DNA of 63,595 nucleotides from Octopus bimaculoides. Its lineage: Eukaryota. The stretch spans positions 41,906,670 to 41,970,264 of the forward strand of contig NC_068988.1 in assembly GCF_001194135.2 (NCBI RefSeq). The letters are read 5' to 3'. A model generated the notes under the pieces. That model had not been told where the DNA came from and searched no databases. It saw only the letters and a list, made by a program, of their open reading frames with translations. Positions 48,515-48,618 of this stretch are shown here, piece after piece. Position 1 is the stretch's first letter. Each line of letters opens with the position of its first letter. The position numbers and the translations under genes are program-made.

Positions 48515-48618
48515 TTGACTTTCTTTTTTTCTCTCTTCAGGTAAGAAACTCACTCCATTTTGTATTGTTTACTTAACTCCTGTTACTGTTACTGTGTGGT
48601 TCATAAGGAGCGGTAAGT
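48515..48618 (+). promoter_or_regulatory. Candidate recursive splice site (AG|GTAAGA at 48540/48541) with 72-nt RS-exon ending at a GTAAGT donor (48613)
   Basis: Branch-like TTGAC (A at -23), 20 consecutive pyrimidines, CAG, then immediately GTAAGA; GCG|GTAAGT 72 nt downstream. Confidence 0.55.

What the first reader, a model, noticed from the sequence alone, without database searches (positions are those of the whole stretch)
48515..48618. Textbook recursive splice site (ratchet point) with an RS-exon
Seen: TTGAC branch motif (A at -23), 20 uninterrupted pyrimidines, CAG directly followed by GTAAGA, and a second consensus donor GCG|GTAAGT exactly 72 nt later. It is the strongest splice signal I found in the window. 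Known: AG|GT recursive sites followed by a short cryptic RS-exon subdivide very long introns in Drosophila and vertebrate neural genes. Inference: this window lies in a long + strand intron removed stepwise; I know of no mapped recursive sites in cephalopods. One frame ([23 protein letters not shown]) is open, so an ordinary or alternative 24-codon exon is the alternative explanation.
Basis: partly seen in the sequence, partly recalled or inferred. Interest (0 to 1): 0.75.

Follow-up and report, generated by a model that had tools for sequence, protein, structure and literature searches.

The report
Candidate recursive splice site, octopus DNA
A near-perfect "acceptor fused to donor" splice signal followed by a 72-base mini-exon really is present in this octopus sequence and is very unlikely to be chance. 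Whether it is used to cut a long intron out in steps cannot be decided without RNA data.

Summary
TTGAC has its A at -23. Twenty pyrimidines follow, then CAG|GTAAGA at 48540|48541, and GCG|GTAAGT lies exactly 72 nt later.

With a generic splice-site matrix, the acceptor is the best of about 6,500 AG sites on both strands. The fused AG|GT site beats the runner-up by 10 bits. An empirical null expects 0.008 such sites per window, or about 1e-4 once the second donor is required.

The window is exon-poor, repeat-rich octopod DNA. I found no other credible exon, no Rfam RNA, and no protein anywhere that contains the 24-codon peptide. A control showed that Octopus sinensis proteins are in that database.

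The open frame carries no information, because 64% of random 72-mers in this window have one.

The downstream donor pairs with U1 at least as well as the regenerated donor can. Published donor-competition rules therefore predict partial or full inclusion. That resembles Drosophila Ubx microexons mI/mII more than a silent ratchet point.

I could not test transcription, strand, host gene, junction reads or conservation. Verdict: a probably genuine splice unit of recursive type. Recursion itself is plausible (about 0.4) but unproven.

The parts
48508..48512 (+). Second candidate branch site CTCAC (yUnAy), with A at 48511 = -30
   Evidence: Read. Mapped fly recursive branch points lie at -36 to -21 with a peak at -30.
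48515..48519 (+). Candidate branch site TTGAC (yUnAy), with A at 48518 = -23
   Evidence: There is no AG between it and the 3' splice site.
48519..48538 (+). Polypyrimidine tract of 20 uninterrupted C/T
   Evidence: Only 308 of 121,942 positions in the window have an equally good tract. It stays unpaired in the predicted RNA fold.
48539..48540 (+). AG of the 3' splice site (TCAG|)
   Evidence: The acceptor PWM score of 17.2 bits is the best of about 6,500 AG sites on both strands.
48541..48548 (+). Intronic half of a 5' splice site, GTAAGAAA. It would be completed by the last bases of whatever exon is spliced onto 48541 (the regenerated, recursive donor).
   Evidence: 11.1 bits in the genomic context. 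U1 duplex is -11.0 kcal/mol at best and -9.5 after ...AAG.
48541..48612 (+). 72-nt RS-exon candidate. It has 24 codons, preserves the frame, and is open in one frame.
   Evidence: It is the best exon-like unit in the window (27.6 against 20.8). No protein in the 5.8-billion-sequence database shares words with its translation.
48610..48620 (+). Downstream 5' splice site GCG|GTAAGTAT, which defines the RS-exon
   Evidence: 10.4 bits, and only 16 donors this good in 122 kb. Nine contiguous base pairs with U1, -11.2 kcal/mol.

Best explanation
This is a genuine + strand splice unit of the recursive (RS-exon) type, sitting in a long exon-free stretch of an octopod gene.

Proposed mechanism:
1. The 72-nt unit is recognised by exon definition. 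U2AF and U2 bind the 20-nt pyrimidine tract and a branch A at -23 or -30. U1 binds GCG|GTAAGT at 48613.
2. An upstream exon is ligated to 48541, removing the upstream intron segment as its own lariat.
3. The new junction reads (exon end)|GTAAGA, a regenerated 5' splice site that competes with the 48613 donor.
4. If the regenerated donor is used, the 72 nt are removed with the downstream intron segment. This is the recursive, 'zero-length' outcome. If the 48613 donor is used, a frame-preserving 24-codon cassette is included.

The two donors are about equally strong, so I expect a mixed or regulated outcome. That would resemble the Ubx mI/mII microexons rather than a completely silent ratchet point.

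Shown: the sequence architecture, its statistical rarity, and the relative strength of the two donors. Inferred: transcription of the + strand, actual splicing, and use of the regenerated donor.
For: All letters are confirmed.

Rarity:
- The site has the top acceptor in the window and is the top fused AG|GT site by 10 bits.
- It is the top exon-like unit.
- The chance expectation is 0.008 per window for the fused site and about 1.3e-4 with the second donor. Zero of 100 shuffles contain the motif.

Fit to known recursive sites:
- Both candidate branch points fall in the -36..-21 range mapped for fly recursive sites.
- RS-exons are short, about 50 nt, and flanked by a downstream donor.
- The Ubx microexons also begin with GTAAGA.
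- Fused sites are 4- to 22-fold enriched on the sense strand of introns over 50 kb in all five invertebrates tested. The chance density is about 0.1 per 100 kb (PMC2773006).
- 91 of 160 motif-plus-conservation predictions in flies were later validated.

Context:
- I found no other credible exon within 48.5 kb upstream or 15 kb downstream. This fits a long intron.
- The 72-nt peptide is absent from all database proteins, although Octopus sinensis RefSeq proteins are present. This fits an exon that is normally removed or not annotated.
Against: - There is no evidence that the + strand is transcribed or that any gene spans the window. An exon-free window fits intergenic DNA equally well.
- SINE orientation (5 on +, 4 on -) gives no strand signal.
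- Conservation, the hallmark of real ratchet points, could not be examined.
- The downstream donor is never weaker than the regenerated one. Silent recursion is therefore not what donor competition predicts.
- Position -6 is C, whereas 99.5% of fly ratchet points have TT at -6/-5. This may be fly-specific.
- The 240 nt upstream are 67% pyrimidine. That locally raises the chance of a good tract.
- My PWMs are generic metazoan matrices, not cephalopod-trained.
Confidence: 0.4

Rival explanations
1. This is a chance pseudo-exon. A pyrimidine-rich, low-complexity patch happens to be followed by CAGGTAAGA and, 72 nt later, by another GTAAGT. It lies in DNA that is intergenic, antisense to a gene, or simply ignored by the spliceosome.
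For: - No host gene, no other exon and no transcription evidence were found.
- The site sits in a 400-bp island between a TA microsatellite and a GTA microsatellite, in repeat-rich draft sequence with a gap 283 nt downstream.
- The upstream 240 nt are 67% pyrimidine.
- Scaled to an assumed genome of about 2.5 Gb, my null predicts several hundred fused sites and a handful of full architectures by chance.
- In vertebrates such motifs are barely enriched over the antisense strand.
Against: - The per-window expectation is only 0.008, or about 1e-4 with the second donor. Zero of 100 shuffles contain the motif.
- Nothing else on either strand comes within 10 bits.
- Three independent signals coincide in the right order and spacing: a branch point with tract and AG, a juxtaposed donor, and a second donor at exon-definition distance.
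Confidence: 0.3
2. This is an ordinary cassette or constitutive exon, coding or non-coding, that merely happens to start with GTAAGA. The regenerated donor is never used, for example because the exon junction complex represses it.
For: - Splice sites on both sides are strong, and the downstream donor is at least as strong as the regenerated one.
- The length is a multiple of three with one open frame.
- In humans 1.7-4.9% of annotated exons regenerate a usable donor. Most of them are kept in the mRNA by exon junction complex repression (PMC6224609).
Against: - No protein in the 5.8-billion-sequence database shares even three 5-residue words with the translation. Octopus sinensis RefSeq proteins are in that database.
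- The open frame is uninformative, because 64% of random 72-mers have one. The amino-acid composition scores -4.3 bits, slightly on the side of random translation of AT-rich DNA, which is weak evidence from 23 residues.
- No Pfam match.
- An exon that begins with a strong donor is by definition an RS-exon candidate, so this rival differs only in outcome.
Confidence: 0.2
3. The AG|GT is a dual-use site or an alternative 5' site. It would serve mainly as the donor of an upstream exon 48389-48540 (acceptor ...TTTCTGAAG|AAGAGC at 48388), with GTAAGT at 48613 as an alternative donor 72 nt further on.
For: The acceptor at 48388 scores 9.6 bits. The resulting 152-nt exon has an open frame, and its pair score of 20.8 ties for second best in the window. 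Dual-specificity AG|GT splice sites have been described in mammals (own knowledge; the term is in use in 19 held papers).
Against: This reading leaves a perfect 20-nt tract plus branch site immediately before the AG as a coincidence (frequency 0.0025 per position). The putative exon contains a TA microsatellite and the tract itself, and has no Pfam or database match.
Confidence: 0.05

Closest known systems
Drosophila Ubx microexons mI and mII (expressed RS-exons)
   Same: Short, frame-preserving exons (51 nt there, 72 nt here) inside a very long intron. They begin with GTAAGA directly after the 3' splice site, so a donor is regenerated after ligation. They can then be kept or re-spliced out.
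   Different: The Ubx exons are deeply conserved, wobble positions included, and are proven by RT-PCR and genetics. Here nothing shows expression, conservation or coding. The host gene is unknown.
Drosophila intronic ratchet points with cryptic RS-exons (kuz, Bx, luna and others; about 200-500 sites)
   Same: Fused (Y)n-CAG|GTAAG motif, a prominent pyrimidine tract, a branch point at -21..-36, and a short cryptic exon closed by a downstream donor. The location is presumably a long intron with segments of tens of kb.
   Different: Fly sites almost always have TT at -6/-5, whereas here it is CT. Their regenerated donor usually beats the RS-exon donor, whereas here it does not. Fly cryptic RS-exons are generally out of frame, whereas this one is a multiple of three. 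Fly sites are ultraconserved, which was not testable here.
Vertebrate RS-exons (cryptic ones in long neural genes such as CADM2; thousands of annotated, EJC-repressed ones)
   Same: The exon is defined first, a 5' splice site is then reconstituted at the exon-exon junction, and the outcome is set by competition with the downstream donor.
   Different: Only nine fully suppressed intronic sites are firmly established in mammals, and the motif is barely enriched in vertebrate long introns. Whether cephalopods follow the invertebrate or the vertebrate pattern is unknown.
Dual-specificity (AG|GT) splice sites and intronic pseudo-exons
   Same: The same CAG|GTAAG string could act as either a donor or an acceptor. 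Pseudo-exons with good sites exist in long introns.
   Different: Dual use needs the upstream acceptor at 48388, which is much weaker. Pseudo-exons rarely combine the best acceptor in 127 kb of scanned sequence with two near-consensus donors.

Membership tests
Recursive splice site (ratchet point) with RS-exon | [quoted passage not shown] | tested here: met
   TCAG|GTAAGA at 48540|48541. The fused score is 28.4 bits, against 18.2 for the next best of 320 AG|GT sites.
Recursive splice site (ratchet point) with RS-exon | Prominent polypyrimidine tract and a branch point about 21-36 nt upstream | tested here: met
   20 of 20 pyrimidines. TTGAC has its A at -23 and CTCAC at -30. There is no intervening AG.
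Recursive splice site (ratchet point) with RS-exon | Downstream 5' splice site that defines a short RS-exon (about 50 nt in flies) | tested here: met
   GCG|GTAAGTAT lies 72 nt downstream, scores 10.4 bits, and forms 9 bp with U1.
Silent (zero-nucleotide) ratchet point specifically | Regenerated donor stronger than the RS-exon donor, so that the RS-exon is always removed | tested here: not met
   U1 duplex is -11.2 kcal/mol for the RS-exon donor, against -11.0 at best for the regenerated donor over all 64 possible upstream exon ends. The upstream exon is unknown and the measure is crude.
Drosophila-type ratchet point | TT at positions -6 and -5 (99.5% of fly sites) | tested here: not met
   -6 is C and -5 is T. 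This is probably a lineage-specific U2AF preference rather than a universal criterion.
Recursive splice site (ratchet point) with RS-exon | Lies on the sense strand inside a long intron (over about 10 kb in flies) of an expressed gene | not testable with these tools
   No annotation or RNA data were available. Indirectly, I found no credible exon for 48.5 kb upstream or 15 kb downstream. The host gene and its strand are unknown.
Recursive splice site (ratchet point) with RS-exon | Strong evolutionary conservation of the AG|GT core relative to the flanks | not testable with these tools
   No orthologous locus could be reached. Window ORFs are not in the collection, an exact 24-mer was absent from metagenome contigs, and protein searches were exhausted.
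Recursive splice site (ratchet point) with RS-exon | RNA evidence: a sawtooth in nascent RNA, exon-to-site junction reads, and segment lariats | not testable with these tools
Ordinary protein-coding cassette exon | Open frame, protein-like composition, and presence in annotated or homologous proteins | tested here: not met
   One frame is open, but so is at least one frame in 64% of random 72-mers. Composition scores -4.3 bits. No word-sharing protein exists among 5.8 billion, and the positive control for octopus proteins worked. No Pfam hit.

The most novel reading that the evidence does not exclude
This is the first recursive splice site and RS-exon identified in a cephalopod, and indeed in any lophotrochozoan. 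That would show that stepwise removal of very long introns through exon-defined AG|GTAAG sites operates in octopus genes as it does in flies and vertebrates. Here the two donors are balanced, so the site could work as a regulated switch rather than a silent ratchet.
Probability: 0.4. Interest if true: 0.5.

Novelty: new member of a known kind. Interest (0 to 1): 0.35.

Why it matters
Cephalopod genomes are large and repeat-rich, with very long genes. How their spliceosome copes with introns of tens to hundreds of kb is unstudied. Recursive splicing is established in Drosophila and vertebrates, and motif enrichment has been shown in a few other invertebrates. The held literature has nothing for molluscs.

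A validated site would extend the mechanism to Lophotrochozoa. It would also give a concrete locus for testing donor competition and EJC repression outside the model species. If the site is false, the case still shows that a 'perfect' motif alone is not proof.

Tried and rejected
1. Host gene and other exons. I scanned ORFs of 90 aa or more and stop-to-stop ORFs of 35-45 aa or more, did a PWM exon-pair scan, and ranked ORFs by amino-acid composition. These returned only microsatellite, SINE, mariner, LINE and GIY-YIG derived frames. The runner-up 'exon' 19337-19564 is a SINE copy.
2. Annotated-exon test. The translation of the 42-aa stop-to-stop frame found no candidate protein.
   - A first positive control with the GIY-YIG ORF found nothing.
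   - A second control with a mariner fragment found 110 proteins, including an Octopus sinensis RefSeq entry.
3. Exact look-up of 10 window ORFs in the 15-billion-protein collection. None were present, so allelic or orthologous contigs cannot be reached that way.
4. An exact 24-mer across the junction searched against JGI metagenome contigs gave 0 hits.
5. An Rfam scan of the whole window gave 0 families.
6. Pfam on the ORFs that overlap the site in three frames or strands gave nothing.
7. RNA folding of 48480-48660 showed no unusual structure (z = +0.7).
8. Strand inference. SINE orientation is 5 versus 4, and the base skew is slight (T>A and G>C by 2%). Both are too weak to use.
9. The repeat-family explanation is rejected within the window. 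The 500-bp island has no second copy there. Genome-wide copy number remains unknown.
10. Not run: the single exhaustive representative-protein search. Any hit could not have been traced back to DNA, and no callable ORF spans the site.

Full report
**What is there.** Reading the + strand confirms the finding base for base.

| Feature | Coordinates | Note |
|---|---|---|
| TTGAC | 48515-48519 | A at 48518, -23 from the first exon base 48541 |
| CTTTCTTTTTTTCTCTCTTC | 48519-48538 | 20 uninterrupted pyrimidines |
| AG | 48539-48540 | 3' splice site |
| GTAAGA | 48541-48546 | donor half directly after the AG |
| GCG\|GTAAGT | G+1 at 48613 | second donor |

The enclosed unit 48541-48612 is exactly 72 nt. 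A second branch-like motif, CTCAC, has its A at 48511 (-30). No AG lies between either branch candidate and the 3' splice site. Of the three frames, only the one giving [23 protein letters not shown] is open. The other two hit TAA.

**Is it more than chance?** I scored every AG and GT on both strands with generic metazoan acceptor and donor matrices. The frequencies come from my own knowledge and are not cephalopod-trained.
- The acceptor scores 17.2 bits, the best of about 6,500 AG sites.
- The juxtaposed donor scores 11.1 bits and the downstream donor 10.4 bits. Only 16 donors that good occur in 122 kb.
- Among 320 AG|GT sites, the fused score is 28.4 bits and the next best 18.2.
- As an acceptor-donor pair with an open frame, it is the best exon-like unit in the window, 27.6 against 20.8.

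The window is full of pyrimidine-rich low complexity, so I used an empirical null. Of 121,942 positions, 308 have an equally good tract, and the core TCAG|GTAAGA or better has probability 2.6e-5. That gives 0.008 expected fused sites per window. Requiring an equally good donor 30-150 nt downstream (p = 0.016) lowers this to about 1.3e-4. The pattern tool agrees. Y14-N-CAGGTAAG occurs once, in none of 100 dinucleotide shuffles, and only 0.06 matches are expected even with two mismatches allowed. Scaled to an assumed genome of about 2.5 Gb, chance would still produce some hundreds of fused sites but only a handful of complete architectures.

**Context.** The window is draft, repeat-rich octopod DNA.
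- It has ten N gaps, one of them only 283 nt downstream of the second donor, and about ninety microsatellite arrays.
- Its interspersed repeats match repeats in an unrelated Octopus sinensis locus at 76-95% identity.
- I found no credible coding exon anywhere in the window. The longer frames derive from microsatellites, SINEs, mariner-type transposase fossils, LINE fragments and GIY-YIG ORFs.
- Rfam finds nothing.
- The site sits in a roughly 400-bp single-copy island, between a TA microsatellite (48113-48298) and a GTA-type array (48796-48858). It has no second copy in the window.
- The nearest other possible exon is therefore more than 48.5 kb upstream and more than 15 kb downstream. This fits a very long intron, but it fits intergenic DNA equally well.
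- SINE orientation (5 on +, 4 on -) and a 2% T>A and G>C skew give no usable strand signal.

**External tests.**
- The stop-to-stop translation of the open frame (42 aa) shares no three 5-residue words with any of 5.8 billion proteins.
- A first positive control with a GIY-YIG ORF failed. A second, with a mariner fragment, returned 110 proteins. One is an NCBI/UniRef protein of Octopus sinensis encoded on a 107-Mb chromosome record. So at least one annotated octopus proteome is in the database, and the 24-codon peptide is not part of it.
- Ten window ORFs are not in the collection, and a 24-mer across the junction is absent from metagenome contigs. I could not reach any allelic or orthologous copy, so conservation remains untested.
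- The open frame itself is uninformative. 64% of all 72-nt stretches in this window have at least one open frame. The peptide's composition scores -4.3 bits, slightly on the side of random translation of AT-rich DNA rather than real protein, which is weak evidence from 23 residues. Its hydrophobic, transmembrane-like look follows from 39% T.

**Comparison with what defines recursive sites.** From the literature read here:
- Fly ratchet points are fused 3'/5' splice sites with an unusually prominent pyrimidine tract.
  - Their branch points lie at -36 to -21.
  - They sit in introns of 11-133 kb and cut them into segments averaging 18 kb, up to 64 kb.
  - They are strongly conserved.
- These sites are recognised through a short cryptic RS-exon (about 50 nt) closed by a downstream donor. 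The outcome is set largely by which donor is stronger.
- The same two-step logic holds in vertebrates. There, 1.7-4.9% of annotated exons regenerate a donor, and the exon junction complex usually represses it.
- Fused sites are 4- to 22-fold enriched on the sense strand of introns over 50 kb in sea urchin and four insects, but not in vertebrates. The antisense (chance) density is about 0.1 per 100 kb.
- 91 of 160 purely computational fly predictions were later validated.

The octopus site meets every sequence-level criterion except two. Position -6 is C rather than the fly-typical T. The regenerated donor is also not the stronger one. RNAduplex against the U1 5' end gives -11.2 kcal/mol for GCG|GUAAGUAU. 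For xxx|GUAAGAAA it gives at best -11.0, after an exon ending in CAG, and -9.5 after AAG. None of the 64 possible exon ends makes the regenerated donor the stronger one. By the competition rule, the 72 nt should be included at least part of the time. The closest analogue is therefore not a silent ratchet point. It is the pair of Ubx microexons mI/mII: short, frame-preserving exons that start with GTAAGA and can be kept or re-spliced out.

**Most likely mechanism (inferred).** The unit is defined as an exon. An upstream exon is ligated to 48541 and the first intron segment leaves as a lariat. The junction recreates (exon end)|GTAAGA. Either this donor or the one at 48613 is then joined to the next exon. 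The 72 nt are removed in the first case and retained in the second. I give this 0.4.

**Rivals.**

| Rival | Confidence | For | Against |
|---|---|---|---|
| Chance pseudo-exon in untranscribed or antisense DNA | 0.3 | No sign of any gene; locally pyrimidine-rich setting | The statistics above |
| Ordinary exon whose GTAAGA start is never used | 0.2 | Strong downstream donor; EJC repression is common in vertebrates | Absent from proteins; non-coding composition |
| Dual-use or alternative-donor reading, with an upstream exon 48389-48540 | 0.05 | Acceptor at 48388 scores 9.6 bits | The perfect tract would be a coincidence |

**Novelty and value.** No held paper links recursive splicing with octopus or other cephalopods. 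If validated, this would be a new member of a known kind of element in a new phylum. That is useful but not surprising, given the view that the mechanism is shared across metazoans. Without RNA or comparative data it remains a well-founded candidate.

The decisive data are strand-specific total or nascent RNA-seq junction and lariat reads at 48540|48541, an octopod multi-genome alignment of the core, and a sense-versus-antisense census of fused sites in long octopus introns.

Noticed in passing
window 47927-48036: A perfect foldback: two 55-nt arms, 98% complementary, with zero spacer, about 500 nt upstream of the site and wedged between TG/TA microsatellites. It could be an assembly artefact (chimeric foldback read) or a genuine hairpin-forming palindrome.
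   Followed up: partly
window 4616-5047 (-), 55240-55602 (+), 60860-61677 (-): Three decayed copies of a small ORF family with a GIY-YIG nuclease motif (YIG...R...H...). The first passes Pfam PF01541 (23.2 bits against a cutoff of 22.6). It shares no words with any database protein. It is probably a selfish or transposable-element gene family of the octopus genome.
   Followed up: partly
window 37016-37490 (-) and 49445-50325 (-): Mariner-type transposase fossils. The first matches SETMAR-like/HTH_48 proteins, including one from Octopus sinensis, at 58% identity. I recognise the second, 0.9 kb downstream of the site, only from its ...YSPDIDPSDYHLF... motif (own knowledge; no Pfam hit).
   Followed up: partly
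window 19218-19765, 29533-29654, 32637-32713, 39399-39676, 45955-46156, 46915-47125; also 24011-24424 and related: At least two SINE families. One is tRNA-derived by my reading (not tested). The families recur in an unrelated Octopus sinensis locus at 76-95% identity. This is what identifies the window as octopod DNA. The species itself was not determined.
   Followed up: yes
window 48699-48702: A second, weak AG|GT (CCCTAG|GTGATA) lies 88 nt after the 48613 donor, and an ACTAAC branch-like motif is at 48628-48633. It does not score among the top fused sites.
   Followed up: no
window 48895-49237 and nine other N runs: Assembly gaps. The one at 48895 begins only 283 nt downstream of the second donor, so the immediate downstream context of the candidate exon is incomplete.
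   Followed up: no
window 10638-10811 (-), 62166-62405 (-): Short frames that resemble the C-terminal part of LINE reverse transcriptases (...LLYGxExW...). This rests on my own knowledge. The only support is a weak DUF6451 hit for the second.
   Followed up: no
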